DNA of 64,000 nt from Heterodontus francisci (Eukaryota): the NCBI RefSeq assembly GCF_036365525.1, contig NW_027140825.1, forward strand, positions 1,550,001 through 1,614,000. The letters are read 5' to 3'. Both the position numbers and the translations under genes were made by a program. Shown here in pieces: positions 9,906-58,509 of the stretch (position 1 is the first letter of the stretch; every line of letters starts with the position of its first letter). The notes under the pieces are model-generated. The model worked only from the letters and a program-made list of their open reading frames with translations, was not told the origin of the DNA and made no database searches.

Positions 9906-9909
9906 TATG

Positions 9910-10946
9910 AGGGCAGTACTGAGGGAGTGCTGCACTGTCGTAGGGTCAGTACTGAGAGAGTGCTGTACTGTCAGAGGGTCAATACTGAGGGAGTGCTGCA
10001 CTGTCAGAGGGTCTGTACTGAGGGAGTGCTGCACTGTTGGAAGGTCAGTACTGAGGGAGCGCTTCACTCACAGAGGGTCAGTACTGAGGGAGTGCTGCAC
10101 TGTTAGAGGGTCAGGACTGAGGGTGTGCGGCACTGTCGGAGGGTCAGTACTGAGTGAGTGCTGCACTGTGACAGGGCCAGTACTGAGGGAGTGCTGCACT
10201 GACAGAGGGTCAGTACTGAGTGAGTGCTGCACTGTCAGAGGGGAAAACTGAGGGAGTGCTGCACTGTCGGAGGGTCAGTACGGAGGGAGTGCTGCACTGT
10301 CCGAGGGTCAGTACTGAGTGAGTGCTGCACTGTCAGAGGGGCTAACTGAGGGAGTGCAGCACTCTGCGAGGGTCAGAACTGAGGGAGTGCTGCACTGTCA
10401 GAGGGACAAACTGAGGGAGTGCTGCACTGTTAGAGGGTCAGTACTGAGTGAGTGCTGTACTGTCAGAGGGTCAGTACTGAGGGAGTGCTGCACTGTCAGT
10501 GGATCAGTACTGAGGGAGTGCTGCACTGTGAGAGGAGCAGTACTGAGTGAGTGCTGCACTGTCAAGGGTCAGTACTGAGTGAGTGCTGTACTGTCAGAGG
10601 GTCAGTACTGAGGGAGTGCTGCACTGTCAGAGGGTCAGTACTGAGGGAGTGCTGCACAGTTATTGGGGCAGTACTGAGTGAGTGCTGCACTGTCAGAGGG
10701 TCAGTACTGAGGGAGTGCTGCCCTGTCAGAGGAGCAGTACTGAGTTAGTGCTGCACTGTCAGAGGGTCAGTACTGAGTGAGTGCTGTACTGTCAGAGGGT
10801 CAGTACTGAGGGAGTGCTGCACTGTGAGAGCAGCAGTACTGAGTGAGTGCTGCACTGTCAAGGGTCAGTACCGAGGGAGTGCTGCCCTGTCAGAGGAGCA
10901 GTACTGAGTGAGTGCTGCACTGTCAGAGGGTCAGTACTGAGGGAGT
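9910..10946. repeat. 33-bp minisatellite (CAGTACTGAGGGAGTGCTGCACTGTCAGAGGGT)n, ~31 copies, DeuSINE-domain-like
   Basis: Clear tandem copies; produces spurious VLRECCTV ORFs. Confidence 0.9.
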
Positions 10947-11433: not shown

Positions 11434-11472
11434 CACAGTGACTCAGCGGGATGGAGCTGTTCAACAAAAACC
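11434..11472 (+). other. 23-RSS of V1
   Basis: CACAGTG-23 bp-ACAAAAACC. Confidence 0.95.
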
Positions 11473-12182
11473 CAAAAGGCTGCAGGAAACACCTGTTTCA
11501 GATAAAATTGCTCTGTGGCCCTTATGCAGAGTGAAAGCGTTTATTACAATAAAAAGAACTGAGTTATGATTGTAGTGACAAATTGAATTTACAGGTACTG
11601 GCGAGGGTGCAAAGAACGATGAATAAGGATGTCACGAGATAGGGAGACAAAGATAGCGTCAAAGACAGCGAGACAGCAAGAGAGACATAATGAGAGAGAG
11701 AGATCGACAGAGTGGACAGCGGGAGAGAGGAGGAGAGAAAGAGAGACTGAGATTTAAAAAAAACAAAGCCTGAGACAGATAGGGCGATAGAGATAGAGAC
11801 AAACACAGTGACAGAGAAAGAACTAAAGAGATAGCAAAACTAAGAAATTGGGAGAGAGAGAGAGAGAGTCAGAGAGAGACGGAGAGAGTGGAAGGTAAAC
11901 TGAGAGAGAGAGATAGTCAGAGAGAGGGAGACAGCGAAAGGTAAACTGAGAGAGAGGGAGAGAGTGGAAGGTAAACTGAGAGAAAGAGAGAGAAGTAGAT
12001 TGGCAAACAATTTGATTGTGATTTGTTCACCTGGGGGAATGGGCGTCTCCAACATTGTATCACTTCCTAATGCTCTTCATGTTCCTCCCAATGATTTGTA
12101 AAGAGTGGATTTGGACCCTCACAAGACTCTAAGCTCCTGATCTCACTCCTATGTCTATTAATAGAACAAGTTGAAGTGAAAG

Positions 12183-12639: not shown

Positions 12640-12678
12640 CACACTGACTCAGAGAGATGGAGAAGTTCAAGAAAAACC
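12640..12678 (+). other. Degenerate 23-RSS of V2
   Basis: CACACTG-23-AGAAAAACC. Confidence 0.9.
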
Positions 12679-12991
12679 CCAAAGGCAGCAGGAAACACCT
12701 GTTTCAGATAAAACCAGGCGGTGCTGCGTCCTGTTGGGTGTTTTCATCATTGGGAACATGTTTTTCACAAGACAGGGCGGATTTAAATAGATAGAGACTG
12801 GTTAGAAATAGAAGCCCAGGGGAATTGTGAAATAGACTTTACAGGAATGATATCAGGAAACAGAGGTTAAAGTTATCAAGATAGTTTGAACATCGGGGGA
12901 TCTTTGTTCCAGAAAGGAGAAGAATGAAGGGTAAACCTTCATCCGTCTTAGAGAGATTATTAAAGACTTTAATATGTGAAGTGAAGATCAG

Positions 12992-14454: not shown

Positions 14455-14805
14455 GGGAGCAGAGCAGTTATGTTACTGGACTAGTAATCCAGAGGCCTGG
14501 ACTAATGATCCCCAGATATGAGTTCAGTTCTCAGCAGGGGCAGAAATGGAATTTAAATTTAATTAAGTAAATAAATAAAATCTGTAATGGAAAGTAAGAG
14601 CAATTCTGAACATGGAGTGTCGTAAAAAGCCAACGTATTCATTGATAACCTTCAGGGAAGGAAATCTGCCATTCTTACCCGGTCTGGCCTATATGTGACT
14701 GCAGACCCACAGCAATGTAGTTGACTGTTAACTGCCCTTTGATATGGCCCAGCAGGTATTCCCGAAGATGGTTCACCACCACCTTCTCAGGGGCAATAAG
14801 GGATG
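14455..14805 (+). mobile_element. tRNA-derived shark SINE (HE1-like) upstream of family-B promoter; further copies ~32115-32470, ~56070-56420, inverted at ~17370-17740 and ~34065-34350
   Basis: GTTACTGGACTAGTAATCCAGAG head, GGAAATCTGCC..CCGGTCTGGCCTA core, GGGCAATAAGGGATG tail; family name from recall. Confidence 0.65.
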
Positions 14806-15097
14806 TACACACTCTCTGGGTATGGAGGGTTGTTTCCCTGAATTCTACTCTATCAAATCCCTTTCTGAAATGTGAACACCTCTATTCAATCTCCCCCTAT
14901 CCTCCTGTGTTGTATCATTCTACAACATTGCTTTGCAAAGTAATGGGGAGGAGCAGAGTGTCGCAGTAAGTGACTGCCAATCACAATGACAACCGGATGC
15001 TGGGTATTTAATTGGATACAATATCGAAACCGACTGCAAGTGTGTTGTTGAAAACTCCACACGTTCACACATCGAGTTAGTATCGAATGAAGAAATC

Positions 15098-15930
15098 ATG
15101 TTGCATGAAGTTCTCTGTCTAACCTTGATGGCTGCACTCTTCCCACGTAAGTCAAAGTCAGAAACTGTGCACAATAATGTATTGTCATGTCAGCGGTGAT
15201 TCTGTCCAAAACACTCCTGTGTCAGAGTCTCACTACAGAACATTGAGCTCAAAGTCAAGGCTGACAACCCAGGTGTCAGGACCGAGGGAGTGCTGCACTG
15301 TCGCAGAGGCAGTACAGAGGGAATGCTGCACTATCGCAGAGGCTGTACTGAGAGAGTGCTGCACTGTCGCAGAGTCAGCACAGAGGGAGTGCTGCACTGT
15401 CACAGAGGCACTATTGAGGAAGTGCTGCACTGTCGACGAAGCAGCACTGAGGGAGTGCTGCACTGTCGCAGAGGCAGTACTGAGGGAGTACCTACATTGG
15501 TTGCAAAGCCCTTTCTGATGACCTGAGGTCCTGAACGGCGCTATATTAATGTAAGCCCTTTATTTCTTGCAATGCAGCTCCTGCTCCAATCCATTATTGA
15601 CTGAAATAATAATCTAATCGATGTTCCATTCCACAGGAATACTCTCCTCCTATGTGGAACAGTCGCCCTCTATCCTATCGCTTTCCGCAGGAGAGTCGAC
15701 AACACTCAGATGCACGCTGACCAATACTGACTATTCCTTTCTATACTGGTACAGACAACAAGCAGACAGGGCACTGGAAGCTCTGTTCTATTCTGCTACA
15801 GAAGGGTCTGTTACCAATTACACGTCCGAGTCATTTAAGGCAGTCAGAGCCAGCAATACACTGTTTACTTTGGCACTGAGAGACGCCGCTCCATCTCACA
15901 CCGCTGTCTACTTCTGCACTTGTAGTATCG
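15098..15930 (+). CDS. TRBV: V3: TCR beta V segment, family B, potentially functional; leader 15098-15146 (MLHEVLCLTLMAALFP), V exon 15637-15930
   Basis: GT/AG phase-1 intron, C..WYRQ..YFCTCS, open frame, consensus RSS. Confidence 0.93.
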
Positions 15931-15969
15931 CACAGTGTTTGAGAAAGCGGATCCGCAGCTGCAAAAACC
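15931..15969 (+). other. 23-RSS of V3
   Basis: CACAGTG-23-GCAAAAACC. Confidence 0.95.
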
Positions 15970-15989
15970 TGCAGTGGATGAATGGGAGT

Positions 15990-17199
15990 TCAGTGCTCAT
16001 CTTCCCCCGGCAGGGGGCAGCAGTAGATTAAATCTCAATGCTCATCTTCCCCCGGCAGGGGGCAGCAGTAGATTGAATCTCAGCGCTCATCTTCCCCCGG
16101 CAGGGGGCAGCAGTAGATTGAATCTCAGTGCTCATCTTCCCCCGGCAGGGGGCAGCAGTAGATTGAATCTCAGTGCTCATCTTCCCCCGGCAGGGGGCAG
16201 CAGTAGATTGAATCTCAGTGCTCATCTTCCCCCGGCAGGGGGCAGCAGTAGATTAAATCTCAGTGCTCATCTCCCCCCGGCAGGGGGCAGCAGTAGATTA
16301 AATCTCAGTGCTCATCTCCCCCCGGCAGGGGGCAGCAGTAGATTGAATCTCTGCGCTCATCTTCCCCCGGCAGGGGGCAGCAGTAGATTGAATCTCAGTG
16401 CTCATCTTCCCCTGGCAGGGGGCAGCAGTAGATTGAATCTCTGCGCTCATCTTCCCCCGGCAGGGGGCAGCAGTAGATTAAATCTCAGTGTTCATCTTCC
16501 CCCGGCAGGGGGCAGCAGTAGATTGAATCTCTGCGCTCATCTTCCCCCGGCAGGGGGCAGCAGTAGATTGAATCTCTGCGCTCATCTTCCCCCGGCAGGT
16601 GGCAGCAGTAGATTGAATCTCTGCGCTCATCTTCCCCCGGCAGGGGGCAGCAGTGGATTGAATCTCAGTGCTCATCTTCCCCCGGCAGGGGGCAGCAGTA
16701 GATTGAATCTCTGCGCTCATCTTCCCCCGGCAGGGGGCAGCAGTAGATTGAATCTCAGTGCTCATCTTCCCCCGGCAGGGGGCAGCAGTAGATTGAATCT
16801 CAGTGCTCATCTTCCCCCGGCAGGGGGCAGCAGTAGATTGAATCTCTGCGCTCATCTTCCCCCGGCAGGGGGCAGCAGTAGATTGAATCTCTGCGCTCAT
16901 CTTCCCCCGGCAGGGGGCAGCAGTAGATTGAATCTCTGCGCTCATCTTCCCCCGGCAGGGGGCAGCAGTAGATTGAATCTCAGTGCTCATCTTCCCCCGG
17001 CAGGGGGCAGCAGTAGATTGAATCTCAGTGCTCATCTTCCCCCGGCAGGGGGCAGCAGTAGATTGAATCTCTGCGCTCATCTTCCCCCGGCAGGGGGCAG
17101 CAGTAGATTGAATCTCAGTGCTCATCTTCCCCCGGCAGTGGGCAGCAGTAGATTGAATCTCAGTGCTCATCTTCCCCCGGCAGTGGGCAGCAGTAGATT
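15990..17199 (+). repeat. 45-bp tandem array, 27 copies, each with a CTCF-type core CCGGCAGGGGGCAGC
   Basis: Cores at 16007+45n to 17177; unit AATCTCAGTGCTCATCTTCCCCCGGCAGGGGGCAGCAGTAGATTG. The array is certain; CTCF binding is inferred. Confidence 0.95.
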
Positions 17200-18131
17200 T
17201 GATCCTCCCTGATGGTGATGGGCACAGTAATGAGCACAGACCAAGCTGTAGAATAGATCAGCAGCCCAGTGTGACCCAGATATTGTTCCACCTACTTCCC
17301 TCGGGCCAATGTTGCAGAAAACGTTTGCCAGGAGTCCCACCTGACCATTTGTGAATCAACATCTGGCTGTTTTTCTTAATTCGTTCATGGAATGTGGGCC
17401 TCGCTGGCTCTGCCATCATTTATTGCCCATCCCTAATTGCCCTTGAACTGAGTGACTTGCTTGGCCATTCCAGAGGGCATTTAACAGTCAACTACATTGT
17501 GTGGATCTGGAGTCACATGTAGACCAGACCAGGTGAAGGCGGTAGATTTCCTTCCCTAACATCAGTGAACGAGATGGATTGTTGCAACAATGGTCACCAT
17601 TAGACGAGATTCTTTTGAAAATATAGATTTATTAATGACATTGAAATGTCTTTATTTGTGTTGGTGGGATTCCCCCCCCCCCCCTCCCCCGCCCCACGTC
17701 GCTATAACTCTAGCCGAGGCTGTGGATTAAGAATCTAGTCAAGTCAGCCACGCACTAATACATCCCCTACAGGAGCAGATCATTTGGAATGCAGATGTCT
17801 ATAATTGGAAATCTACATGTGGCTAATGTGGGAATGCCGATGAGGTTCATTACGTACAATTGGAGATTTCTAATCAGTAAATTAGAAACTGAACAACAGA
17901 CACCCTTGTTGGGGATGTCAACAACACTTACTCCAGTCACTCAACCATCATAAGCAACCACGTCCATTCTGATTGGTTGGGTGCTGGAAGGGGCGTGTCC
18001 AACACTGCATTACTTCCTCATGCCCTTCATGTTTTACTCAATGATTTGTAAAGAGCGGATTGGTTAGTCACAGAACTGATTTCCTCTGTTCCACTTCCTT
18101 TGCTGTTTGAGAGGGCAGTGTCAAGTGGGAG

Positions 18132-18515
18132 ATGTATCTGTTCCTGGCTCTGATAATCCTGGGTCAAGGATACAAAGATTATCCTTCAGAACCTTCCTGT
18201 CTTCTCCCTGTCTCCCTTCCATTCCCAGAAGTTCCCTGTTTACTGATCTCCTCCTCTCTCCATCTCTCTCCCAGATGTGAACTCACAGACTATCCACCAG
18301 ACTCCCGCCGCAGTCTCCAGGTTTCCCGAGAAATGAGTGGAACTGAGGTGCACTGTGGAGGGGAGCAGCAGTCACCTCTCCATGTACTGGTACAGACAAG
18401 AGCCGGGGAAGGAGCCGCTGTTGATGTTTTACTCCAGTACTGTTAACTATGTGGATCCAGAGGGGACGGTGGGCGGTTTCACCGCCGAGAGACCGACTGA
18501 CTCCCAGTTCAACCT
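18132..18515 (+). pseudogene. TRBV: V4: family A pseudogene, 3'-truncated
   Basis: Leader donor deleted, TGA at 18334, FR3 end and RSS deleted after 18515. Confidence 0.92.
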
Positions 18516-18550
18516 TTGCTCCAGAAAGGAGAAGACTGAAGGGTAAACAC

Positions 18551-18604
<54 letters not shown>

Positions 18605-19559
18605 TACGGTGTGGTGTCATGTCACTGTGTTTCCTTTCTCCAAAGGGACAGCAGAGTGCACTGTAGGACCATGATAAACATCAGAGTCTGCAACACACTT
18701 TAACAGTGACCTGGGAACACAAGGAGACCATTCATCACCTCGGAAACACTCCGACCTTCAATGAGATCATGACTGATCAATAACTTCCTGTCGCTCCCTC
18801 TTTCCATCCCTCTTTCTCCATCCCTCTCTCCATCCCCCTCTCTCCCCATCTCTCCATCCCTCTTTCTCCAAACCTACGCTCCCTCTCTCTCCCTCCCTCT
18901 CTCTCCCACTAGCTACAAAGCCGGTGTAAAACGAGAGAATGCCAATTAACATCCCTGTCTTTAACATGGGCAGTGACTGCCTCTCTATCTAGCTCGCTAA
19001 ATCTCTACCTATCTGACTTTCCCTCTATCTCTGTATTTCTCTACCTCTCTATATATCTATCTTTGTACCTGACTGTCTATCTATCTATCTCTCTACCTGG
19101 TTATCTATCGCTCTTTCTCGCTATCTATCTAACTCTATCTTTAGCTGATTACAGTTTGTATGAACTGATTAAACATACTGTAATAATGTAATGAATGACC
19201 ATCTTTTCAGAGATTTTCTATATATTGACCAGTCGATGATGTGGTTTGTCATCAATTATCTATCAAAATCCTCTATGATCTTCAATGTCTGTATCACATC
19301 TACCATTAACCTTCTGTGCTGCAAGTAGAGAAACCCCCACATTCTCCAGTCTCTCCACAGTAACTGAAGTCCCTCATCCCTGGCACCAGTCTGGTTAATA
19401 TCCCTCTCACCTTCACTGCACAGAGGGGAACAACCCCCAATGCACAGGGACTCAATACATCCGGTGATAAAACACAGAGACAGAGAGAGTGAATCAGGGA
19501 GACATAGAGAGGAAAAACTCAGCGTAAATGAACGGGACAGAGGGAGACAGAGAGAGAAC

Positions 19560-19597
<38 letters not shown>

Positions 19598-19777
19598 TAC
19601 AGAGTGAGAAAGAGATTGAAAGAGTTGGAGACATAAAGCTCGATACATGCAGAGAGAGAGAGAGAGAGATAGAAACAAAGTGTAAGAAAGAGAGAGGAAG
19701 GCGGATTGAGATAGATAGAGAGAGAGACGTTGTCAACCTACTCCACTCTAACTTGTTGACCTGGGCGTCACCATCTC

Positions 19778-19790
19778 TGCATCACTTCCT
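19778..19790 (+). promoter_or_regulatory. Family A promoter motif TGCATCACTTCCT (ETS AGGAAGTG plus decamer-like AGTGATGCA on minus strand)
   Basis: Recurs ~115-125 bp before the ATG of V2, V4, V5, V7, V8, V13, V14, V16, V17, V18. Confidence 0.55.
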
Positions 19791-19903
19791 AACGCTCTCC
19801 CTGTTCCTCCCAATGATTTGTAAAGAGTGGGTTGGTTATTAACAACACTCATCACTCCTGCTCTCTTCTCTTTGCTGATTCAGAGGGCAGCTTCAAGTAA
19901 AAG

Positions 19904-20378
19904 ATGTATCTGTTACTGACTCTGATCACCCTGTTTCACCGTAAGGGATTTTATTGAAACAATAATTCTACTTAACATTTCTTTCATTTTATTTATTTTT
20001 GATTCTCTCTCTCTCTCTTCTCTCTCCCCAAGGCACTGAATGTCCCTGTTTACTGATCTCTCTGTCTCTTTCCCAGATGTGAACTCACAGACTATCCACC
20101 AGACTCCCACCGCTGTCTCTAAATTGCCTGGTGAGAGAGTGGAACTGAAGTGCACTGTGCAGGGCAGCAGCACCAGTATCCTATACATGTACTGGTACAG
20201 ACAATACCCGGGGAAGGAGCCACAGATGATGTTTTACTCTATCGCTGCACAAAACGTGAAATCAGAGGGGATGGTGGACGGTTTCACCGCCGAGAGACCG
20301 AGTAACTTCGACTTCAACCTGGAGTCCTCCAGCCTGCGGGAGGATCACTCGGCCGTGCATTTCTGTGCCTGGAGTCTT
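19904..20378 (+). CDS. TRBV: V5: family A V, open frame; leader 19904-19940, V exon 20077-20378; conserved Tyr replaced (HFC)
   Basis: MYLLLTLITLFH-H-VNSQTIHQTP...HFCAWSL; functionality uncertain. Confidence 0.88.
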
Positions 20379-20417
20379 CACAGAGACTCAGAGAGATGGA
20401 GCAGTTCAACAAAAACC
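20379..20417 (+). other. 23-RSS of V5 with variant heptamer
   Basis: CACAGAG-23-ACAAAAACC. Confidence 0.9.
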
Positions 20418-20494
20418 CCAAAGGCAGCAGGAAACACCTGTGGACTTTAAAACTGCTCGGAGCCGAGAACTTCTTTCGTTTAGCAGAGCGAAAG

Positions 20495-22124
20495 AATACT
20501 GAGATTCAGGCTACTCGGCTAGATGGGATTGAGGTTCACAAGGAGGAGGTGTTAGCAATTTTGGAAAGTGTGAAAATAGATAAGTCCCCTGGGCCAGATG
20601 GGATTTATCCTAGGATTCTCTGGGAAGCCAGGGAGGAGATTGCAGAGACTTTGTCCTTGATCTTTATGTCATCATTGTCGACAGGAATAGTGCTGGAAGA
20701 CTGGAGGATAGCAAATGTTGTCCCCTTGTTCAAGAAGGGGAGTAGAGACAGCCCTGGTAATTATAGACCTGTGAGCCTTACTTCGGTTGTGGGTAAAATG
20801 TTGGAAAAGGTTACAAGAGACAGGATTTATAATCATCTTGAAAAGAATAAGTTCATTAGCGATAGTCAGCACGGTTTTGTGAAAGGTAGGTCGTGCCTCA
20901 CAAACCTTATTGAGTTTTTCGAGAAGGTGACCAAACAGGTGGATGAGGGTAAAGCCGTGGATGTGGTCTATATGGATTTCAGTAAGGCGTTTGATAAGGT
21001 TCCCCACGGTAGGCTATTGCAGAAAATACGGAAGTATGGGGTTGAAGGTGAATTAGTGCCTTGGATCAGAAATTGGCTAGCTGAAAGAAGACAGAGGGTG
21101 GTGGTTAATGGCAAATGTTCATCCTGGAGTTTAGTTACTAGTGGTGTACCGCAAGGATCTGTTTTGGGGCCACTGCTGTTTGTCATTTTTATAAATGACC
21201 TGGAAGAGGGTGTAGAAGGGTGGGTTAGTAAATTTGCAGATGACACTAAGGTCGGTGGAGTTGTGGATAGTGCCGAAGGATGTTGTAGGGTACAGAGGGA
21301 CATAGATAGGCTGCAGAGCTGGGCTGAGAGATGGCAAATGGAGTTTAATGCGGAAAAGTGCGAGGTGATTCACTTTGGAAGGAGTAACAGGAATGCAGAG
21401 TACTGGGCTAATGGGAAGATTCTTGGTAGTGTAGATGAACAGAGAGATCTTGGTGTCCAGGTGCATAAATCCCTGAAGGTTGCTACCCAGGTTAATAGGG
21501 CTGTTAAGAAGGCATATGGTGTGTTAGCTTTTATTAGTAGGGGGATCGAGTTTCGGAGCCACGAGGTCATGCTGCAGCTGTACAAAACTCTGGTGAGACC
21601 GCACCTGGAGTATTGCGTGCAGTTCTGGTCACCGCATTATAGGAAGGATGTGGAAGCTTTGGAAAAGGTGCAGAGGAGATTTACTAGGATGTTGCCTGGT
21701 ATGGAGGGAAGGTCCTACGAGGAAATGTTGAGGGACTTGAGGTTGTTTTCGTTGGAGAGAAGGAGGAGGAGAGGTGACTTAATAGAGACATATAAGATAA
21801 TCAGAGGGTTAGATAGGGTGGATAGTGAGAGTCTTTTTCCTCGGATGGTGATGGCAAACACGAGGGAACATAGCTTTAAGTTGAGGGGTGATAGATATAG
21901 GACAGATGTCAGAGGTAGTTTCTTTACACAGAGAGTAGTATGGGCGTGGAACGCCCTGCCTGCAACAGTAGTAGACTCGCCAACTTTAAGGGCATTTAAG
22001 TGGTCATTGGATAGACATATGGATGAAAATGGAATAGTGTAGGTCAGATGGTTTCACAGGTCGGCGCAACATCGAGGGCCGAAGGGCCTGTACTGCGCTG
22101 TAATGTGCTAATTCTAATTCTAAT
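20495..22124 (+). mobile_element. 5'-truncated young CR1 LINE with uninterrupted RT frame (stop at 22042) and (ATTCTA)n tail
   Basis: KSPGPDG, YRPVSLTS, DFSKAFD, PQGSVLGP, FADD; no endonuclease domain. Confidence 0.95.
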
Positions 22125-22241
22125 AACAAAAACACCAAAGGCAGCAGGAAAGATTTGTAAAGAGTGGATTTGGACCCTCACAAGACTCTAAGCTCCTACT
22201 GTCACTCCTGTGTCTATTAAGAGAACAAGTTACAGTGAAAG

Positions 22242-22697
22242 ATGTATCTGTTAATAGGTCTGATAATCCTGTTTCACTGCAAGTGATCATGAAATGCAAA
22301 GATTATCGTTAATAACCTTCCTCTCCTCTCCCTGTCTCCCTTTCATTCCCAGAAATTCCCTGTTTACTGATCTCCTCCTCTGTCCATCTCTGTCCCAGAT
22401 GTGAACTGACAGACTATCCACCAGACTCCCACCGCTGTCTCCAGATTTCCCGGGAAAGGAGTAGAACTGATGTGCACTGTCAAGGGGAGCAGCAGTAGCA
22501 TCTCCATGTACTGATACAGACAACACCCGGGGAAGGAGCCGCTGTTGATGTTTTACTCCAGTACTGCTAACTATGTGGATCCAGAGGGGACGGGGAAAGG
22601 TTTTACCGCCGAGAAAATTAATAAGTACGAGTTCAAACTGGAGTCCTCCAGCCTGCGTGAGAATCACTCGGCCGTGTATTTCTGTGCCTGGAGTCTT
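22242..22697 (+). pseudogene. TRBV: V6: family A pseudogene; leader 22242-22278, V exon 22399-22697
   Basis: GC donor, TGA after VN, Trp->TGA, truncated promoter. Confidence 0.93.
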
Positions 22698-22730
22698 CAC
22701 AGTGAGAGATGGAGCAGTTCAACAAAAACC
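22698..22730 (+). other. Defective RSS of V6 (17-bp spacer)
   Basis: CACAGTG-17-ACAAAAACC. Confidence 0.9.
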
Positions 22731-23269
22731 CCAAAGGCAGCAGGAAACACCTGTTTCAGATAAAACCAGGCGGTGCTGCGTCCTGTTGGTTGTTTTTGGC
22801 ATTGGAAAAGTGTTTTTCACAAGAAGACAGGGCGGATTTAAACAGAAAGTGAGAGGTTAGAAATAGAAGCACAGGGGAATTGTGAAATAGACTTTACAGG
22901 AATGATATCGGAACAAAGATAGTTTGAACATCTTTGCTCCAGAAAGGAGAAGACTGAAGGGTGAACATTCATAGTTCTTAGAAAGATTATAAAAGGCTTT
23001 AATGTGTGAAGTGAAGATCAGATAGGTAGGGAGATAGGTCGATAGATAGCTGGCAGGCAGACAGACACTGTTGTGTTTTATTCACTGACTGTGTTGTCTT
23101 TATCCAAAGGGACAGCAGAGGGCGGTGTAGGACCGTGATAAGTATCAGATTATTGATGATGTTTCAATAGGGACTTTGAAACTTGTCTATGAACCTCTCC
23201 TGATAATTATAGAACTACATCCCGGTTACAGTCTGGTGAACTGAACACAAGGTACCGCAGATGCTGGAT

Positions 23270-23840
23270 GGTTTAGGTTCTGGGCGCTCTGTCACTATAT
23301 TGGAGCTCATTGCGTTTCTGGGATATAAATAAATAAGGATGGAAATACTAATCAGGTCAGACAGCCTCTGTGGAGAGAGACAAAATATTAACATATCAGG
23401 TCGTAGACCTTTCAACAGAACTGGAAGGATTTAGTGATCTATCAGCTATTAAGCAGCAGAAAGCCAGGGAGAGGGAGAATGGGAGGAATGCAGGAGAGAT
23501 TTAATAACAAAACTGAGGCTGGTGCAAGACAAAGGAGATGTTAATGGGTCAAGAAAAGAACAAGAGATGGGTCTAGAGGAGGTGAAAGTAGCAGAAACAC
23601 AATCATTACCAACAAACCTCTGCCCATATAAACCGGAGCAGTTGTTATGATCAGAAATTGTTCAACTCATTGTTGAGCCCTGAAAGCTGTAAAGAATCCA
23701 ATTGAAAGATGATGTGCTTTTCTTCGAGTTTCTGTGCAGCTTCACTGGAGCAGAGAAGGAGGTCGAGGACAGAGAGGTCAGGGTGGGAGTGGGAATGAGA
23801 ATTAAAAGTATCCGCTAAACGGAATCTCAGGGTCACACTT
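23270..23840 (-). mobile_element. Penelope-like retroelement 3' fragment (copy at ~46790-47360; short related piece ~7665-7850)
   Basis: FNSHSHSH.DLSVL.LL....KLEEKHIIFQL..LQ.SGLN resembles the GIY-YIG C-terminus. Confidence 0.65.
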
Positions 23841-24494
23841 GCAGCCTGAATGCAGGATGTTCCACAATGCTGTTAGCCTGTTGCTGTACTTGGTCTCTGC
23901 AGCTAGTCCCACTCCCCCTGCCCTTTCTAAATAACACTGCACATTTTCCTTTCAGATAATTATCCAAATTTCCTTTTGAAAGCGACGATTGAAACTGCCT
24001 CCCCCGCACTCTCAGGTAGTGCATTCCAGATCCTAACCATTCACTGTGTCAAAACGTTTCCTCAGTTCACCTTTGGATCTTCTGCCAATTACCATCAATA
24101 AGTGACCTCTGGTTCTCAATCAATCCGGTGATGAAACATACAGACAGAGAAGGTGAATCAGGGAGACGTCGTGAGGAAAAGCTCAGTGGAAATGAACGGG
24201 ACAGAGGGAGACAGAGACAGAAAGATGCACACACACACAAACACACACAGATACAGAGAGAGAAAGAGAGTGAAAGAGTTGTAGACATAAAGCTGGATGT
24301 ATGCAGATAGAGAGAGAGAGACATTGTCAACCTACTCCACTCTGACTTGTTTACCTGGGCGTCACCATCTCTGCATCACTTCCTAATGCTCTTCCTGTTC
24401 CTCCCAATGATTTGTAAAGAGTGGGTTGGTTATTGACAACACTCATCACTCCTGCTCTCTCCCCTTTGCTGATTCAGACGGCAGCTTAAAGTAA

Positions 24495-24971
24495 ATGATG
24501 TATCCGTTACTGACTCTGATCACCCTGTTTCACCGTAAGGCATTTTATTGAAACAATAGTTCTACTTAACATTTCTTTAGGTGATGTTTTTATTTATTTA
24601 TTTCTCTCTGTCTCTCTCCCACTGGACAGAAGTTCCCTGTTTACTGATCTCCTCCTCTCCCTGTCTCTTTCCCAGATGTGAACTCATAGAATATCCACCA
24701 GACTCCCGCCGCTGTCTCCAAATTTTCTGAGGAGCAGGTGAAGTTGAAATGCACCGTGCAGGGCAGCAGTAACCCTGACATGTTCTGATACAGACAATAC
24801 CCGGGGAAGGAGCCACAGTTTATGTTTTACTCCACAGGTACTGATCACATAAATCCGGAGAAGGCGGTGGACGGTTTCACCGCCGAGAGACCGACTAGCT
24901 CCCAGTTCAATCTGGAGCCCTCCAGCCTGCGGGAGAATCACTCGACCGTGTATTTCTGTGCCTGGAGAGAT
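24495..24971 (+). pseudogene. TRBV: V7: family A (CAWRD type) pseudogene; leader to 24534, V exon 24676-24971
   Basis: TAG after VNS and Trp->TGA; paralog of V16. Confidence 0.93.
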
Positions 24972-25008
24972 CACAGTGACTCAGAGTTGGAGCAGTTCAA
25001 CAAAAACC
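24972..25008 (+). other. RSS of V7 (21-bp spacer)
   Basis: CACAGTG-21-ACAAAAACC. Confidence 0.9.
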
Positions 25009-26249
25009 CCAAAGGCAGCAGGAAACACCTGTGGAGGGTAAAACTGCCCGAAGCCTCGAATTTCTTTCGTTTTGCAGAGCGAAAGTGTTTATGATAACAA
25101 GAAGAGATGGGTCAGAGTGGTAGTGAGAGATTAGATATACAGGTAGTAGAGAATGTGCTAAGAACAATTGACAAGGATAACACGAGATCTGAGGTTCTAA
25201 CTATCAGGAAAGATCAACTATAAAACGACTTGAGTTCTTCTGCATTGACACTGAGTTTTCCTCCTCTGTAGGGTTAACAGAGGGTGCTCTAGGACCATGA
25301 ATGCACAATGGCCTGGCAAACATTTAATAGGAAAACAGAAAGAGGCAGAGATCATACAGCCCTCGAGCTTCATACACATTGACAGGAGAAGCACATTCAT
25401 CACCTTTGAGAGGGATACACACGCACTCAACGAGAGAGACAAAGAGAGATTGAGACAGACAGGAGAAGAGAGAGGAGAGCGAGGAGGACAGAGAGGGGGA
25501 ACAAGAAAGAGAGAGAGGGAGAACAAAAAACACAGAGGAAGAGACTGAGACAGAGAGACTGAGACAGAGAAACAGTGAGGGAGACTGAGAGAGAGAGACT
25601 GAGAGACAGAGAGAGACAGAGAGTGAGAGAGAGACAGAGAGAGAGAGACAGAGACAGAGAGAGAGAGACTGAGAGAGAGACAGAGAGAAAGCGACTGAGG
25701 GAAAGCGACTGAGACAGAGAGACAGACAGAGGAGAGAGAGGAGGACAGAGAGGGGGAAGAAGGAAGTGCGAGAGAAAAGCAAAAAAAACACAGAGGAAGA
25801 GAGTGAGACAGATTGGGAGACAGACACACACACACACAGAATGAGACAGGGAGAGAAAGACAGCAAGCAGTAAAACAGAGGGAGACAGTTAACTAAAGAC
25901 AGAGCGAGTGAAAAACACACGCACACACATGCACAGCTTTGTATCCGTGCCCATTCATCTTCCAGCTCATTGAATAAGAATATCCCGTGATCTCAGGATT
26001 GTAACTATCAGGAATGAATAACAATAAAAGGACTGGGGCTGTTATAGACTGACTCTGTGTATGTTTTCACCACAGGGACAGCTGAGGACGCTCTAGGACC
26101 ATGTGATGTACAATGGCTTTTGAGAAGGAGTTCACAGGAAAACTGAAACAGTGAGAGAACATACAGTCCTCCAGGTTGATATACATGACCAGGAGAAGGA
26201 AATCCACATCCTTAGAGAGAGAGAAGAGAGAGAGAGACACACACTCAGC

Positions 26250-27712: not shown

Positions 27713-27995
27713 AAGTGTCCTTCTTGAATAATGGTACAACATTCGCTGTCCTCCAGTCCTCTGAGACCACTCCTGTGGCCAGAGAGAATTGAAAATTTGT
27801 GTCAGAGGCCCTGAAATCTCCTCCCTTGCCTCACATAACAGCCTGGGATATGTCTCATCCGGGCTGCGGTCTTATCCACTTTTAAGACTGCTAAAACAGC
27901 TAATACTCCTCCCTTTAAAAGCTAATATGTTCAAGTATATCACAACCCCCCTCCCTGATATCTACACCTACATCATCCTTCTCCATAGTGAACAT
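27713..27995 (-). mobile_element. Short CR1 RT fragment (copies ~29905-30185 and ~53722-54005)
   Basis: Minus strand reads EDWRTANVVPLFKK. Confidence 0.75.
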
Positions 27996-29296: not shown

Positions 29297-29333
29297 TGCA
29301 GCGGATGAACGGGAGTTCAGTGCTCATCTTCAA

Positions 29334-29348
29334 CTGGCAGGGGGCAGC
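29334..29348 (+). promoter_or_regulatory. Single RSS-proximal CTCF-type motif
   Basis: CTGGCAGGGGGCAGC 37 bp after nonamer. Confidence 0.55.
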
Positions 29349-30616
29349 AGTAGATTGAAGCTTATTGTTCATATCTATCTGTCCACCTGATTGTTTATCT
29401 CTCTGTCTCTCTATCTATCTATCTCTTTACCTGGTTATCCATCTCTGTCTCTCTATCTATCTAACTCTATCGTTAGTTCATTACAGTTTGTGAGAACTAA
29501 TTAAACATACTGCAGTAATGTAATGAATGACCATCTTTTCATCGATTTTCTATATATTGACCAGTAGAAGATGTGATTTGTCATCAATTATCTATCAAAA
29601 TCCTCTATGATCTTCAATATCTGTATCACATCTACCATTAACCTTCTCTGCTCTAAGGGCAGAAACCCCCAGCTTCTCCAGTCTCTCCACAGTAATTGAA
29701 CTCCCACATCCCTGGTACCAGTCTTGTTAATCTCCCTCTAACCTTCACTACACAGAGGCGAACAACCCCCCAATGAACAGGAACTAACTCAGATCGGAAC
29801 CCTTAACCATCTGAGCGCTGTTTCACACTGTTCAAAGGCGAGATCCCTCTCCAGATAACTTCATCTCTGGGACACCTGCCTCCTGACAGCGAGTTCAGAA
29901 GCGCCCAAGTGTCCTTCTTGAATAATGTTACAACATTCGCTGTCCTCCATTCCTCTGAGACCACTCCTGTGGCCAGAGAGAATTGAAAATTTGTGTCAGA
30001 GGCCCTGAAATCTCCTCCCTTGCCTCACATAACAGCCTGGGATATGTCTCATCCGGGCTGCGGTCTTATCCACTTTTAAGACTGCTAAAACAGCTAATAC
30101 TCCTCCCTTTAAAAGCTAATATGTTCAAGTATATCACAACCCCCCTCCCTGATATCTACACCGACATCATCCTTCTCCATAGTGAACATAGTGAAATATG
30201 CCGTTCTTATCCGGTCTGGCCTATATGTGCCTCCAGACCAACAGCAATGTTGTTGACTATTAACTGCCCAGCAGGCATTCCCGAAGATGGTTCACCACCA
30301 CCAACTCAAGGGCAATAAGGGATGCGCACACTCTCCGGGTACAGAGGGTTGTTTCCCTGAATTCTACTCTATCAAATCCCTTTCTGAAATGTGAACACCT
30401 CTATTCAATCTCCCCCTATCCTCCTGTGTTGTATCATTCTACAACATTGCTATGTAAAGTAATGGGGTGGAGCAGAGTGTTGCAGTAAGTGACTGCCACT
30501 CACAATTACAACCGGATGCTGGGTATTTAATTGGATACAATATAGAAACTGCCTGCAAGTGTGTTGTTGAAAACTCCACACGTTCACACATCGAGTTAGT
30601 ATCGAATGAAGAAATC

Positions 30617-31391: not shown

Positions 31392-31428
31392 TGCAGCGGA
31401 TGAACGGGAGTTCAGTGCTCATCTTCAA

Positions 31429-31443
31429 CTGGCAGGGGGCAGC
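31429..31443 (+). promoter_or_regulatory. Single RSS-proximal CTCF-type motif
   Basis: CTGGCAGGGGGCAGC. Confidence 0.55.
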
Positions 31444-32757
31444 AGTAGATTGAAGCTTATTGTTCATATCTATCTGTCCACCTGATTGTTTATCTCTCTG
31501 TCTCTCTATCTATCTATCTCTCTACCTGGTTATCTATCTCTCTGTCTCTCTATCTATCGAACTCTATCTTTAGGTAATTACAGATTGTATGAACTAATTA
31601 AACATACTGCAGTAATGTAATGAATGACCATCTTTTCATAGATTTTCTATATATTGACCAGTAGAAGATGTGATTTGTCATCAATTATCTATCAAAATCC
31701 TCTATGATCTTCAATATCTGTATCACATCTAATTAACCTTCTCTGCTCTGAGGGCAGAAACCCCCAGCTTCTCCAGTCTCTCCACAGTAACTGAAGTCCC
31801 TCATCCCTGATACAAGTCTGGTTAATCTCCCTCTAACCTTCACTACACAGAGGTGAACAACTCCCCAATGCACAGAATCTAACTCAGCGCAGAACCCTGA
31901 ACCATCTGAGCGCTGTTTTACACTGTTCAAAGTCGAAACCCCTCTCCAGATACCTTCATCTCTGGGACACCTGCCTCCTGACAGCGAGTTCAGAAGCTGC
32001 TGAAAACTCTTTACCCACTTTCACCTCAGACTCGAGTCACATGTTCTTCAAAGAAACTAGCAGTTCAGACCAGTGAACAATTTAACCATTTAACTCCCAT
32101 TCACCACGGAGGTTCGGCAGCAGAGCAGTTATGTTACTGGGCTCGTAATCCAGAGGCCTGGACTAATGATCCCCAGACTTGAGTTCAATTCCCACACTGG
32201 CAGAAATGCAATTTAAATTCAATTAATTAAATAAATAAAAATCTGTCATGGAAAGTATGAGTAATCCTGAACATGGAGTGTCTTAAAAACCCAACGTCTT
32301 CATTGATTACCTTCAGGAAAGGAATCCACCATTCCTACCCGGTCTGGCCGATATGTGACTCCAGACCCACAGCAATGTGGTTGACTATTAACTGCCCTCT
32401 GATATGGCCCAGCAGGTATTCCCGAAGATGGTTCACCATCACCTTCTCAGGGGCAATAAGGGATGGGCACATTCTCTGGGTGTAGAGGGGCGTTTCCCTG
32501 AATTCTACTCTATCAAAGCCCTTTCTGAAATGTGAACACCTCTATTCAATCTCCCCCTATCCTCCTGTGTTGTATCATTCCACAACATTGCTATGCAAAG
32601 TAATGGGGTGGAGCAGAGTGTCGCAGTAAGTGACTGCCAATAACAATGACAACCGGATGCTGGGTATTTGATTGGATACAATATAGAAACCGACTGCAAG
32701 TGTGTTGTTGAAAACTCCACACGTTCACACATCGAGTTAGTATCGAATGAAGAAATC

Positions 32758-43942: not shown

Positions 43943-44019
43943 CCAAAGGCAGCAGGAAACACCTGTGGACTTTAAAACTGCTCGGAGCCGAGAACTTCTT
44001 TCGTTTAGCAGAGCGAAAG

Positions 44020-55337: not shown

Positions 55338-55374
55338 TGCAGCGGATGAACGGGAGTTCAGTGCTCATCTTCAA

Positions 55375-55389
55375 CTGGCAGGGGGCAGC
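55375..55389 (+). promoter_or_regulatory. Single RSS-proximal CTCF-type motif
   Basis: CTGGCAGGGGGCAGC. Confidence 0.55.
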
Positions 55390-56711
55390 AGTAGATTGAA
55401 GCTTATTGTTCATATCTATCTGTCCACCTGATTGTTTATCTCTCTGTCTCTCTATCTATCTATCTCTTTACCTGGTTATCTATCTCTCTGTCTCTCTATC
55501 TATCTAACTCTATCTTTAGGTAATTACAGTTTGTTTGAACTAATTAAACATACTGCAGTAATGTAATGAATGACCATCTTTTCATAGATTTTCTATATAT
55601 TGACCAGTAGAAGATGTGATTTGTCATCAATTATCTATCAAAATCCTCTATGATCTTCAATATCTGTATCACATCTAATTAACCTTCTCTGCTCTAAGGG
55701 CAGAAACCCCCAGCTTCTCCAGTCTCTCCACAGTAACTGAAGTCCCTCATCCCTGATACCAGTCTGGTTAATCTCCCTCTAACCTTCACAAAACAGAGGC
55801 GAACAACCCCCCAATGCACAGGAACTAACTCAGCACAGAACCATTAACCATCTGAGCGCTGTTTCACACTGTTCAAAGGCGAAACCCCTCTCCAGATAAC
55901 TTCATCTCTGGGACACCTGCCTCCTGACAGCGAGTTCAGAAGCTGCTGAAAACTCTTTACCCACTTTCACCTCAGACTCGAGTCACATTTAATGTGTTCT
56001 TCAAAGAAGCCAGCAGTTCAGACCAGTGAACAATTTAACCATTTAACTCCCATTCACCACAGAGGTTCGGCAGCAGGGCAGTAATGTTACTGGGCTAGTA
56101 ATCCAGACGCCTGGACTGATGATCCCCAGACTTGAGTTCAATTCCCACCGGGGCAGAAATGCAATTTAAATTCAATTAATTAAATAAATAAAAAATTGTC
56201 ATGGAAAGTATGAGTAATCCTGAACATGGAGTGTCTTAAAAACCCAACGTCTTCATTGATGACCTTCAGGGAAGGAAATCCGCCATTCCTACCCGGTCTG
56301 GCCTATATGTGACTGCAGACCCACAGCAATGTGGTTGACTGTTAACTGCGCCCTGATATGGCCCAGCAGGTATTCCCGAAGATGGTTCACCATCACCTTC
56401 TCAGGGGCAATAAGGGATGGGCACACTCTCTGGGTATAGAGGGTTGCTTCCCTGAATTCTACTCTATCAAATCCCTTTCTGAAATGTGAACACCTCTATT
56501 CAATCTCCCCCTATCCTCCTGTGTTGTATCATTCAACAACATTGCTATGTAAAGTAATGGGGAGGAGCAGAGTGTCGCAGTAAGTGACTGCCAATCACAA
56601 TGACAACCGGATGCTGGGTATTTAATTGGATACAATATAGAAACCGCCTGCAAGTGTGTTGTTGAAAACTCCACACGTTCACACATCGAGTTAGTATCGA
56701 ATGAAGAAATC

Positions 56712-57637: not shown

Positions 57638-58127
57638 TCAGTGCTCATCTTCCACCGGCAGGGGGCAGCAGCAGATTGTATCTCAATGCTCATTTTCCAC
57701 CAGCAGGGGGCAGCAGTAGATTGAATCTCAGTTATCATCTTCCAACGGCAGAGGGGCAGCAGTAGATTGAATCTCAGTTATCATCTTCCACCGGCAGGGG
57801 GCAGCAGTAGATTGAATCTCAGTGCTCATCATCCACTGGCAGGGGGCAGCAGTAGATTGAATCTCAGTGCTCATCTTCCCCCTGCAGGGGGCAGCAGTGG
57901 ATTGAATCTCAGTGCTCAACTTCCACCGGCAGGAGGCAGCAGTAGATTGAATCTCAGTGCTCATCCTCCACCGGCAGGGAGCAGCAGTTGATTGAATCTC
58001 AGTGCTCATCTTCCACCGGCAGGGGGCAGCAGTAGATTGAATCTCAGTGCTCATCTTCCACCGGCAGGGGGCAGCAGTAGATTGAATCTCAGTGCTCATC
58101 TTCCACCGGCAGGGGGCAGCAGTAGAC
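57638..58127 (+). repeat. 45-bp CTCF-motif array, 11 copies
   Basis: CCACCGGCAGGGGGCAGCAGTAG units from 57655 to 58106. Confidence 0.93.
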
Positions 58128-58509
58128 TGACTGCTCATTTTCTGCAACCAGTTCATGGAATCATCTTGGATAACAGAACAGAAGGAGACCATTCGGCCCA
58201 TCTCCCCCGTACTGGCTTATTTGAAAGAACTGTCCAGTTTATGCTCTTCCCCCCTGCTACTTCCCCATAGCCATGCACATTGATTCCATTCACGTGTGCA
58301 ATCCATTGCCTTTTGAATGTTCATGTTCAAGGTGCTTCCAACACCCTTTCAGACAGTGCTAGCCACATCATAACAACTCGCTGCTTAAACAAATCATCAC
58401 ATCTCCCCCCTCCCCCCACTTATTCATCTGCCAGTTACATTTAATCAATGTCTCCTGGTTGCCTTCTGCCGAAAGAAGCAGCTTCTGTTCATTTATAGTT
58501 TTAAAATAA

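What the first reader, a model, noticed from the sequence alone, without database searches (positions are those of the whole stretch)
15990..17199. 27-copy tandem array of forward CTCF-type sites starting 37 bp behind a V-gene RSS
Seen: each 45-bp unit carries CCGGCAGGGGGCAGCAGT. The first core starts 37 bp after the V3 nonamer and all copies face the same way as the V. One variant unit keeps consensus (AGGTGGCAG). Known: this matches the CTCF core CC(A/G)(C/G)(C/T)AG(A/G)(G/T)GGC(A/G); in mouse Igh, single CBEs just 3' of proximal VH RSSs stall cohesin extrusion and boost V use during RAG scanning, and a multi-CBE cluster anchors the 3' end. Inference: an RSS-linked CBE has become a minisatellite 'super-anchor' that could set V usage or block scanning. 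A 45-bp period would fit roughly one CTCF footprint, and the core CpG (CCGG) could make it methylation-switchable. I know of no description of this in cartilaginous fish.
Basis: partly seen in the sequence, partly recalled or inferred. Interest (0 to 1): 0.92.

Follow-up and report, generated by a model that had tools for sequence, protein, structure and literature searches.

The report
CTCF-motif minisatellite behind shark TRBV RSS
Twenty bases behind the recombination signal of an intact shark T-cell-receptor beta-type V gene lie 27 head-to-tail 45-bp repeats, most of them a strong same-direction match to the binding site of the genome-looping protein CTCF, so this is a plausible but untested loop barrier beside a V(D)J cutting site.

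Summary
The array is real: 15990-17199, period 45, 26.9 copies, 96% alike. The exact 18-nt core is in 23 of 27 units, not in each. 24 of 27 units fit the CTCF consensus, all on the V strand. The first core starts 37 nt after the nonamer.

The unit occurs in the window only behind the six RSSs of one V family, with 27, 1, 1, 4, 1 and 11 copies. It is not a high-copy satellite, and contigs of a second species label also hold V end, RSS and unit. Its CpG sits at core position 2, where methylation blocks CTCF (PMC10484683).

Against the strong reading:
- The "single" copies look like truncated arrays.
- A pseudogene carries the best sites, while three intact Vs have only a weak site.
- The core is no more conserved than the rest of the unit.
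- CpG content equals background.
- CTCF binding is untested.

Verdict: an RSS-linked minisatellite of CTCF-type sites. It is probably a directional cohesin barrier when unmethylated, and its copy number probably drifts. This scan has already noted the same 45-bp arrays behind other V genes of this genome.

The parts
15098..15146 (+). Candidate leader exon of the V gene (MLHEVLCLTLMAALFP, GT donor, phase 1)
   Evidence: One search found it as the most hydrophobic ATG...GT candidate. One search found it conserved with its GT donor upstream of all 6 V genes of this family; one copy, V33657, has GTG in place of ATG. No RNA joint from this donor was seen, because the stretch laid began at 15200.
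15277..15489 (.). 33-bp satellite inside the leader intron (genome-wide repeat, not part of the CTCF-type array)
   Evidence: TRF gives period 33 and 6.5 copies. Summed contig word depth is 1.3e5-4e5 in X1, against 500-1200 on the V exon.
15637..15930 (+). V exon, intact, TCR-beta-like V-set domain ending YFCTCSI
   Evidence: Open frame. Pfam V-set E 6.3e-15. Many of the best solved-structure matches are TCR beta chains. A GT..AG joint with its acceptor at 15637 stands in an RNA-type contig set (table 5).
15931..15969 (+). 23-RSS: heptamer CACAGTG, 23-nt spacer, nonamer GCAAAAACC
15970..15989 (+). 20-nt linker between nonamer and array, shared by all six paralogues
15990..17199 (+). 45-bp minisatellite, 26.9 copies. 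Each unit holds one CTCF-type core on the + strand. Two unit subtypes (TCAGTGC / TCTGCGC) are interspersed.
16007..16024 (+). First core CCGGCAGGGGGCAGCAGT, 37 nt after the nonamer; CpG at core positions 2-3
   Evidence: numbering from PMC10484683.
33716..33885 (+). Paralogous array, 3.8 copies, behind pseudogene V33657; holds the two best CTCF matches in the window (33819, 33864)
57638..58130 (+). Paralogous array, 10.9 copies, behind intact V57579; units mostly CCACCGG
29317..29372 (+). About 1.2 units behind intact V29258 (core CTGG form, 9.8 bits), then a switch to a TATC-type repeat
31412..31467 (+). About 1.2 units behind intact V31353 (same form)
55358..55413 (+). About 1.2 units behind intact V55299 (same form)

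Best explanation
A minisatellite has grown at a fixed spot 20 nt behind the 23-RSS of one subfamily of shark TCR-beta-type V genes, and its 45-bp unit is a CTCF-type binding site.

Shown:
- The array, its strong co-oriented motif matches, and its exclusive link to the RSS of this V family in the window.
- Array-specific unit variants, which mean that each array was expanded or homogenised on its own.
- Presence in contigs of a second species label.
- A CpG at the methylation-sensitive core position 2.

Inferred:
- In thymocytes, unmethylated units are occupied by CTCF.
- The N-terminus of CTCF then faces the 3' side, the side where D-J-C must lie for deletional joining. The site therefore stalls cohesin coming from the recombination centre, or anchors extrusion that starts at the V gene. 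Either way the V RSS is held near the D-J RSS, as shown for mouse VH81X and Trbv1.
- Many sites in a row raise the chance that at least one is occupied, and they strengthen the barrier.
- The copy number itself (1 to 27 here) is most likely the product of slippage and unequal exchange that drifts, not a tuned value.
For: Motif:
- 24 of 27 units fit the IUPAC consensus. The window has 32 matches, all on the + strand, against 0.08 expected.
- 23 units score 16.19 bits and one 15.47 bits, p about 2e-6, with the recalled MA0139.1 matrix.
- Shuffled units reach 16.19 bits in 10 of 20000. The other 11 tandem-repeat consensus units tested reach 5.66 bits at most.

Link to the RSS:
- All 6 of 6 V genes of this family have the unit at the same offset. 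None of the 7 V genes of the other family has it.
- No unit-like match lies anywhere else in the 64 kb.

Not a dispersed satellite:
- Summed contig depth over the array is 0-806, like the V exon (500-1200). The flanking 33-bp satellite and the SINE-like repeat give 1e5-1.7e6.

Second species label:
- A 171-nt contig covers V end, RSS and the first core with 11 differences. Contigs of up to 120 nt lie inside the array (records 27-32).

Published context (passages read):
- The mammalian matrix finds oriented CTCF motifs at TAD boundaries of a cartilaginous fish, the little skate (PMC10115646).
- Mouse VH genes that recombine have a CTCF site just 3' of the RSS. Mutating or repairing it changes V use (PMC7930373).
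- Mouse Tcrb has 18 V-side CTCF sites, all convergent to the D-J sites, and scrambling the Trbv1 site lowers Trbv1 joining (PMC10772921).
- Two to four copies of a CTCF site block increasingly (PMC11417384).
- ZF3-ZF11 were crystallised on 35 bp of DNA, and ZF1-2 continue from the core without a gap. About 41 bp per protein therefore fits a 45-bp period; this last figure is my inference.
Against: - No binding data of any kind.
- A core match alone may not bind. A synthetic core-only site bound almost no CTCF (PMC11417384).
- The core is not more conserved than the rest of the unit. High-information positions show 9 variant haplotype cells over 8 positions, against 61 over 37 elsewhere, among 45 units and 29 haplotypes.
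- Site quality does not follow V intactness. The pseudogene V33657 has the best sites, and three intact Vs have one 9.8-bit site.
- This array has fixed CCCCCGG (16.2 bits). The CCACCGG form scores 18.5 bits and is the form in all nine X1 contigs at that place.
- CpG observed/expected is 0.36 in the array and 0.36 in the window. The core CpG is lost in 9 of 45 units, 8 of them by CpG-type transitions (C>T in five, G>A in three) and one by G>T. Both point to germline methylation, which would block binding at core position 2.
- D-J-C is not in the window, so convergence is inferred from V orientation only.
Confidence: 0.5

Rival explanations
1. A neutral GC-rich minisatellite. The unit expands and contracts by slippage and unequal exchange, and it is methylated and unoccupied. 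Its likeness to a CTCF site is either a relic of an old site or chance, and has no present role in recombination.
For: - Copy number runs 1, 1, 1, 4, 11, 27 among paralogues, with no link to V intactness.
- The two unit subtypes are interspersed in the pattern typical of minisatellites.
- Within-array identity is 96% although the cassettes are only about 91% alike, which indicates homogenisation.
- The single strand folds into C5/G5 hairpins with z -3.0, which favours slippage.
- The core is not better conserved than the rest of the unit.
- CpG observed/expected is at background, and the core CpG decays.
- The window is crowded with tandem repeats: 106 TRF rows.
Against: - A match this strong is rare for the unit's composition: 10 of 20000 shuffles. 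None of the other 11 repeat consensus units tested comes near it.
- The position and direction are those of known V-side CTCF sites.
- The unit is kept at the same offset from the RSS in six paralogues about 9% diverged, and in a second species label.
Confidence: 0.35
2. A regulatory repeat read by another factor or process. Candidates are another zinc-finger protein, an Ikaros/ETS-type GGAA reader on the minus strand of CATCTTCC, or a pause or termination zone for germline V transcripts.
For: - RNA-type contigs of the same sample cross the V/RSS border and the first units. Depths are 114-230 there, falling to 4 and then 0, against 9.5 in the leader intron. Germline read-through transcription therefore enters the array.
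- Unit positions outside the core are as conserved as the core.
Against: - No motif other than CTCF was tested with a matrix. The GGAA idea is recalled, not computed.
- Contig depth cannot rank parts of a gene, as the output itself warns.
- The contigs may come from paralogues.
Confidence: 0.08
3. A coding 15-residue repeat, a transposon fragment, a known RNA, or an assembly artefact.
For: - The period is a multiple of three, and a + frame is open from 15935 to 17212.
Against: - The paralogous arrays hold units of 44 and 46 nt that break any frame. The open frame starts inside the RSS.
- There is no Rfam match in 14500-18800.
- Depth is three orders below that of the flanking dispersed repeats.
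- Independent contigs hold tandem units and the exact 3' junction (records 6, 7, 28-32).
Confidence: 0.04

Closest known systems
RSS-proximal CTCF-binding elements of mouse proximal VH genes (VH81X, VHQ52.2.4), as reviewed in PMC7930373 (passages read)
   Same: - A CTCF-type site lies just 3' of the V RSS and points the same way along the V cluster.
- In the mouse such a site stalls RAG scanning and raises use of its V gene.
   Different: - The mouse has one site per V gene. Here there are 1 to 27 in tandem.
- This locus is TCR-beta-like, not Igh.
- In the mouse, pseudogenes lack the site. Here a pseudogene has the best sites.
- Binding and function are untested here.
V-beta-side CTCF sites of mouse Tcrb, e.g. 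the Trbv1 site (PMC10772921, passages read)
   Same: - The locus type is the same.
- All V-side sites share one orientation, convergent to the D-J sites.
- Scrambling the Trbv1 site lowers joining of Trbv1.
   Different: - The mouse sites are single.
- The passages I read do not place them directly behind the RSS.
- Tcrb joining in the mouse relies on extrusion that starts at the V gene plus diffusion, not only on RAG scanning. 'Blocking scanning' may therefore not be the right picture here.
Tandem CTCF-site arrays: the DXZ4/Dxz4 macrosatellite (PMC5899087, PMC3491370; search listing and abstracts only) and the engineered array of 20 CTCF sites put into the Igh V region (via PMC7930373, passage)
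   Same: - Many co-oriented CTCF sites in tandem act as a strong, orientation-dependent anchor.
- The engineered array changed loop domains in Igh.
   Different: - The DXZ4 unit is kilobases long (recalled) and has nothing to do with V(D)J.
- The Igh array is man-made.
- A natural 45-bp-period array beside an RSS turned up in none of my searches.
Methylation-sensitive CTCF sites of the H19/Igf2 imprinting control region (PMC10484683, passages read)
   Same: - A CpG at core positions 2-3, where full methylation inhibits binding.
- CpA at core positions 12-13.
   Different: No evidence here for differential methylation. CpG content is at background.
Classical GC-rich minisatellites (VNTRs) (recalled, no call)
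   Same: - The unit is tens of bases long and G-rich.
- Variant units are interspersed.
- Copy number changes fast between copies.
   Different: Here the unit carries a full CTCF-type site and is tied to one kind of gene landmark.

Membership tests
CTCF-binding element | Match to the 12-15-bp core consensus | tested here: met
   24 of 27 units fit the IUPAC pattern. 24 of 27 score 15.5-16.2 bits, 2 score 10.1 and 1 is under 8, with a matrix recalled for MA0139.1. The skate study used a threshold of 8 (PMC10115646).
CTCF-binding element | Occupancy by CTCF in cells (ChIP, CUT&Tag, footprint) | not testable with these tools
   The 15 listed runs held no ChIP, ATAC, Hi-C or bisulfite library on record.
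CTCF-binding element | 5' upstream motif read by ZF9-11 (present in a minority of strong sites) | not tested
The unit has TCAGTGCTC about 8 nt before the core, but 10 of 27 units read TCTGCGCTC there.
RSS-proximal V-gene CTCF site (mouse Igh type) | Lies within tens of bases 3' of a V RSS | tested here: met
   The array starts 20 nt and the first core 37 nt after the nonamer, in all 6 of 6 family members.
RSS-proximal V-gene CTCF site (mouse Igh type) | Orientation convergent to sites at the D-J-C end | tested here: inconclusive
   All cores are on the V strand, and all 13 V genes face +. D-J-C and its sites are not in the window.
RSS-proximal V-gene CTCF site (mouse Igh type) | Present at functional V genes and absent at pseudogenes | tested here: not met
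   The pseudogene V33657 (GTG start, in-frame TGA) has sites of 22.6 and 22.0 bits. The intact V29258, V31353 and V55299 have one 9.8-bit site each. n = 6.
RSS-proximal V-gene CTCF site (mouse Igh type) | Changes use of its V gene | not testable with these tools
   Contigs cannot give V use. V15931's own letters at 15762, 15911 and 15918 were absent from the RNA-type contigs; its letters at 15762 and 15911 were absent from the DNA contigs too.
Minisatellite / VNTR | Head-to-tail units of 10-100 bp with variant units and changing copy number | tested here: met
   Period 45, 26.9 copies, 14 unit variants. Paralogues hold 1.2, 1.2, 1.2, 3.8 and 10.9 copies. Variation between individuals was not tested.
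Genome-wide satellite or transposon-borne repeat | High copy number, dispersed without regard to V genes | tested here: not met
   Depth is 0-806 over the array against 1e5-1.7e6 for the flanking dispersed repeats. No copy lies elsewhere in the window. Whole-genome placement was not testable. The scan's earlier notes place further arrays behind V RSSs, and one between the last V genes and a D-J pair (unchecked).

The most novel reading that the evidence does not exclude
The arrays are a heritable, copy-number-variable and methylation-switchable set of CTCF anchors. The number of unmethylated units behind each V-beta RSS would set how long cohesin holds that V gene at the recombination centre. 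On that reading, minisatellite instability itself reshapes the shark TCR-beta repertoire between paralogues, between individuals and between species.
Probability: 0.15. Interest if true: 0.85.

Novelty: new variant of a known kind. Interest (0 to 1): 0.6.

Why it matters
CTCF sites beside V-gene recombination signals steer V choice in mice. How old that arrangement is remains unknown, as does what happens when the number of sites changes.

This shark locus offers a natural dose series at one fixed position behind near-identical RSSs:
- about 1, 4, 11 and 27 units in this window;
- 13 to 37 units elsewhere in the genome, by the scan's earlier notes.

The series includes strong (CCAG), medium (CCGG) and weak (CTGG) core variants, and a CpG on the one core position where methylation blocks binding.

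If CTCF binds, RSS-linked loop barriers would date back to cartilaginous fish. The site-number and methylation questions would then be testable without engineering. If it does not bind, the case is a useful warning that strong motif arrays can arise by minisatellite growth alone.

Tried and rejected
- Constraint test within units. With 45 units and 29 haplotypes, the high-information core positions are not clearly less variable than the rest. The test has too little power and is blurred by homogenisation, so it is inconclusive.
- Coding-repeat idea. Rejected, because the paralogous arrays contain 44- and 46-nt units.
- Known RNA family. No match.
- Dispersed repeat. Rejected for the window and by contig depth. 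Whole-genome placement could not be done.
- V15931-specific expression. The RNA-type contigs over the V exon carry paralogue letters at 15762, 15911 and 15918. Only the family is shown to be transcribed, not this gene. Contigs drop rare variants, so this is no proof of silence.
- The GT..AG joint 15550>15637 in one RNA-type contig would put TGA in the V frame (my reading). I take it as a non-coding splice form or a paralogue's. The likely coding leader is 15098-15146, which lies outside the stretch laid.
- Upstream CTCF motif and footprint size. The papers' text gave no consensus letters, Nakahashi 2013 is not held, and supplements are closed. Supplementary tables of PMC10484683 and PMC11417384 may hold the oligo sequences needed.
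- A find in PMC7200164 for site spacing gave nothing.
- Searching the scan's findings by sequence was blank.
- Literature. Searches found no paper in the held library on CTCF-motif tandem arrays beside V RSSs, nor on CTCF at shark antigen-receptor loci. Subscription journals are largely missing from that library.

Full report
WHAT IS THERE

Tandem Repeats Finder reports 15990-17199, period 45, 26.9 copies, 96% matches and no indels. In register this is 26 full units and one of 40 nt, in 14 distinct versions.

The other four units differ as follows:
- unit 10 has CCTGG;
- unit 14 has AGGTGGCAG;
- units 26 and 27 have CAGTGGGCAG.

The array begins 20 nt after a 23-RSS:
- heptamer CACAGTG, 15931-15937;
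- a 23-nt spacer;
- nonamer GCAAAAACC, 15961-15969.

The first core starts at 16007, so 37 nt lie between nonamer and core.

The RSS ends an intact V exon, 15637-15930. Evidence on the gene:
- Pfam V-set, E 6.3e-15.
- TCR beta chains are prominent among the best solved-structure matches.
- A conserved candidate leader exon lies at 15098-15146.

THE WINDOW AS A WHOLE

There are 13 V-type 23-RSSs, all on the + strand, in two V families.

All six members of the family that ends in FCACSI (FCTCSI in V15931) carry the 45-bp unit at the same offset. Their copy numbers are 27, about 1.2, about 1.2, 3.8, about 1.2 and 10.9. None of the seven members of the other family has it. A sensitive search found no other unit-like stretch in the 64 kb, only 10-11-nt chance words.

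IS IT A CTCF-TYPE SITE?

- The IUPAC pattern CCRSYAGRKGGCRS hits 32 times in the window, all on the + strand and all in the three arrays. The expectation was 0.08.
In the array, 23 units score 16.19 bits, one 15.47, two 10.10 and one under 8.
- The best sites of the window are in the paralogous arrays: 22.6 and 22.0 bits at 33819 and 33864 (CCAGCAGGTGGCAG), and 21.8 bits at 57697.
- Shuffles of the unit with the same composition reach 16.19 bits in 10 of 20000. The consensus units of 11 other tandem repeats from this window reach at most 5.66 bits.
- That the mammalian matrix applies to cartilaginous fish is supported by the little skate study. It used MA0139.1 with a threshold of 8 and found oriented CTCF motifs at TAD boundaries (PMC10115646, passages).

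THE CpG

Aligned to the 15-bp core, the unit reads C1 C2 G3 G4 C5 A6 G7 G8 G9 G10 G11 C12 A13 G14 C15.

The passages read in PMC10484683 say three things:
- Full methylation of a CpG at positions 2-3 inhibits binding to the H19 sequence.
- Methylation at positions 12-13 does not inhibit binding.

The sequence, however, gives no sign that the array escapes methylation:
- CpG observed/expected is 0.36 in the array and 0.36 in the whole window.
- The core CpG is lost in 9 of 45 units: C>T in five, G>A in three and G>T in one.
- G>A makes a better CTCF site (CCAG). C>T nearly destroys it (CTGG, 9.8 bits).

HISTORY

- The array-bearing cassettes are about 91% alike, yet units inside array 1 are 96% alike.
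- Array 1 has fixed CCCCCGG, while array 3 has mostly CCACCGG.
- In DNA contigs laid at 90% likeness, all nine contigs covering 16006 read A there, which is the CCACC form.
- Each array was therefore expanded or homogenised on its own, and this one fixed a slightly weaker variant: 16.2 against 18.5 bits.
- The three 'single-copy' cassettes stay homologous for about 11-15 nt into a second unit and then switch to a TATC-type repeat. They look like arrays cut short.
- The single strand of three units folds better than shuffles, z -3.0, through C5/G5 hairpins. That would favour slippage.

DOES SITE QUALITY FOLLOW GENE QUALITY?

It does not, in this sample of six.
- V33657 is a pseudogene (GTG for ATG in the leader, in-frame TGA in the V exon), yet it has the two best sites.
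- V29258, V31353 and V55299 are intact and have one weak site each.
- V15931 and V57579 are intact and have long arrays.

Within units, the high-information core positions are not clearly less variable than the rest: 9 variant cells over 8 positions against 61 over 37.

READS

All four runs laid were Logan contigs, so depth is only a rough guide.

| Stretch | Summed word depth, DNA-type run X1 |
|---|---|
| 33-bp satellite in the leader intron | 1.3e5-4e5 |
| SINE-like repeat at 17384-17551 | 3e5-1.7e6 |
| V exon | 500-1200 |
| 45-bp array | 0-806 |

So the unit is not a high-copy dispersed satellite.

In X5, an RNA-type run of the same sample:
- The V exon stands at about 4400-5300, against 9.5 in the leader intron.
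- One contig shows a GT..AG joint, 15550>15637.
- Contigs cross the V/RSS border into the first units, at depths of 114-230 falling to 0.

The family is therefore transcribed, and germline transcripts probably run into the array. The letters specific to V15931 at 15762, 15911 and 15918 were not seen in RNA contigs, so expression of this particular gene is not shown.

In X7, which has another species label, a 171-nt contig covers V end, RSS and first core with 11 differences. Contigs of up to 120 nt lie inside the array. The arrangement therefore exists beyond one species label.

HOW IT MOST LIKELY WORKS

The first half of the chain below comes from passages I read. The second half is my inference.

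From the papers:
- ZF1-ZF7 run from the 3' to the 5' end of the motif strand (PMC10484683).
- The N-terminus of CTCF binds cohesin, and orientation decides how well a site blocks (PMC10772921).
- In mouse Igh, a site just 3' of a VH RSS raises use of that VH (PMC7930373).
- In mouse Tcrb, all 18 V-side sites are convergent to the D-J sites, and scrambling the Trbv1 site cuts its joining.
- Two to four copies of one site block increasingly (PMC11417384).

My inference:
- With the motif on the V strand, the N-terminus faces downstream. That is the side where D-J-C must lie for deletional joining.
- ZF3-ZF11 were crystallised on 35 bp, and ZF1-2 continue from the core. About 41 bp per protein therefore fits the 45-bp period.

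Against over-reading: a core-only synthetic site bound almost no CTCF.

COMPARISON AND NOVELTY

The parts are known. CTCF sites beside V RSSs, tandem CTCF arrays such as DXZ4, an engineered 20-site array in Igh, and methylation-sensitive sites such as H19 have all been described.

A natural 45-bp-period array of such sites fixed behind a V RSS, with changing copy number, turned up in none of my searches. The held library lacks most subscription journals.

The scan's own earlier notes report the same 45-bp arrays, with 10 to 37 copies, behind other V RSSs. Some are on this piece, 395-945 kb before the window, and some on other pieces. One low-copy array lies before a D-J pair. Apart from the copies in my own window, I did not check those notes.

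VERDICT

I rate it a new variant of a known kind, with interest 0.6. My confidence that it acts as a CTCF barrier is about 0.5.

Noticed in passing
window 13179, 18645, 23109, 35655, 42164, 46634, 52783 (19-mers, + strand): A second, unrelated family of CTCF-like sites, GGGACAGCAGAG(T/G)GCG..., sits in a conserved context (...ctttctccaaa|site|taggaccatgataa...) after GATA/CAGA microsatellites. The six that pass 8 bits score 10.9-17.95 bits; the seventh, at 35655, falls below 8 (CGG for CAG). All seven are on the + strand. Three lie 440-540 nt behind RSSs of the other V family, and one lies 1.45 kb behind the array. V-side co-oriented CTCF motifs may be general in this locus.
   Followed up: partly
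whole window, PWM hits of 8 bits or more outside the six unit loci: 18 hits lie on + and 1 on -. After collapsing duplicated segments that is about 9 independent + against 1 -. This may reflect a co-oriented site layout, or only the G/A-rich + strand.
   Followed up: no
window 18622-25752 vs 42142-49289; 26967-28816 vs 52976-54824; 30803-33175 vs 54749-57129: Large recent segmental duplications, 95-98% alike, carry whole V cassettes. The V cluster grows by tandem block duplication.
   Followed up: partly
window 15277-15489, 9909-10946, 28609-28816, 30803-30911, 32938-33216, 54617-54857, 56892-57137: A 33-bp satellite (CAGTACTGAGGGAGTGCTGCACTGTCGCAGAGG) lies inside the leader intron of every V gene of this family, and also as a 31-copy block. 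Its contig depth is 1e5 or more, so it is a genome-wide repeat.
   Followed up: partly
window 36860-41044: A 4.2-kb C-rich tandem block with a unit of about 30-35 nt (CCCCGGGAACAGACTCCTATCTAAATACCCC) and many indels lies between V33657 and V41723.
   Followed up: no
window 15550>15637: One RNA-type contig joins a GT donor inside the leader intron to the V-exon acceptor. In this copy that join would give TGA in the V frame, so it is an alternative or non-coding splice form, or it comes from a paralogue.
   Followed up: partly
window 11434-11500, 12640-12700, 20379-20440, 41723-41790, 43904-43970, 52343-52410: Six of the seven V genes of the other family share a conserved stretch right after the nonamer, CC(C)AAAGGC(A/T)GCAGGAAA(C/T)ACCTGT, with an E-box-like CACCTG; in 52343 a C>T change breaks it to TACCTG. 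It gives no CTCF hit of 8 bits or more.
   Followed up: no
window 20442 onward and 43967 onward: In two paralogues of that family, the sequence after CACCTGT is replaced by an insertion of about 2.3 kb that pushes the downstream CTCF-like site from about 0.45 kb to 2.7 kb behind the RSS. Probably a transposon.
   Followed up: no
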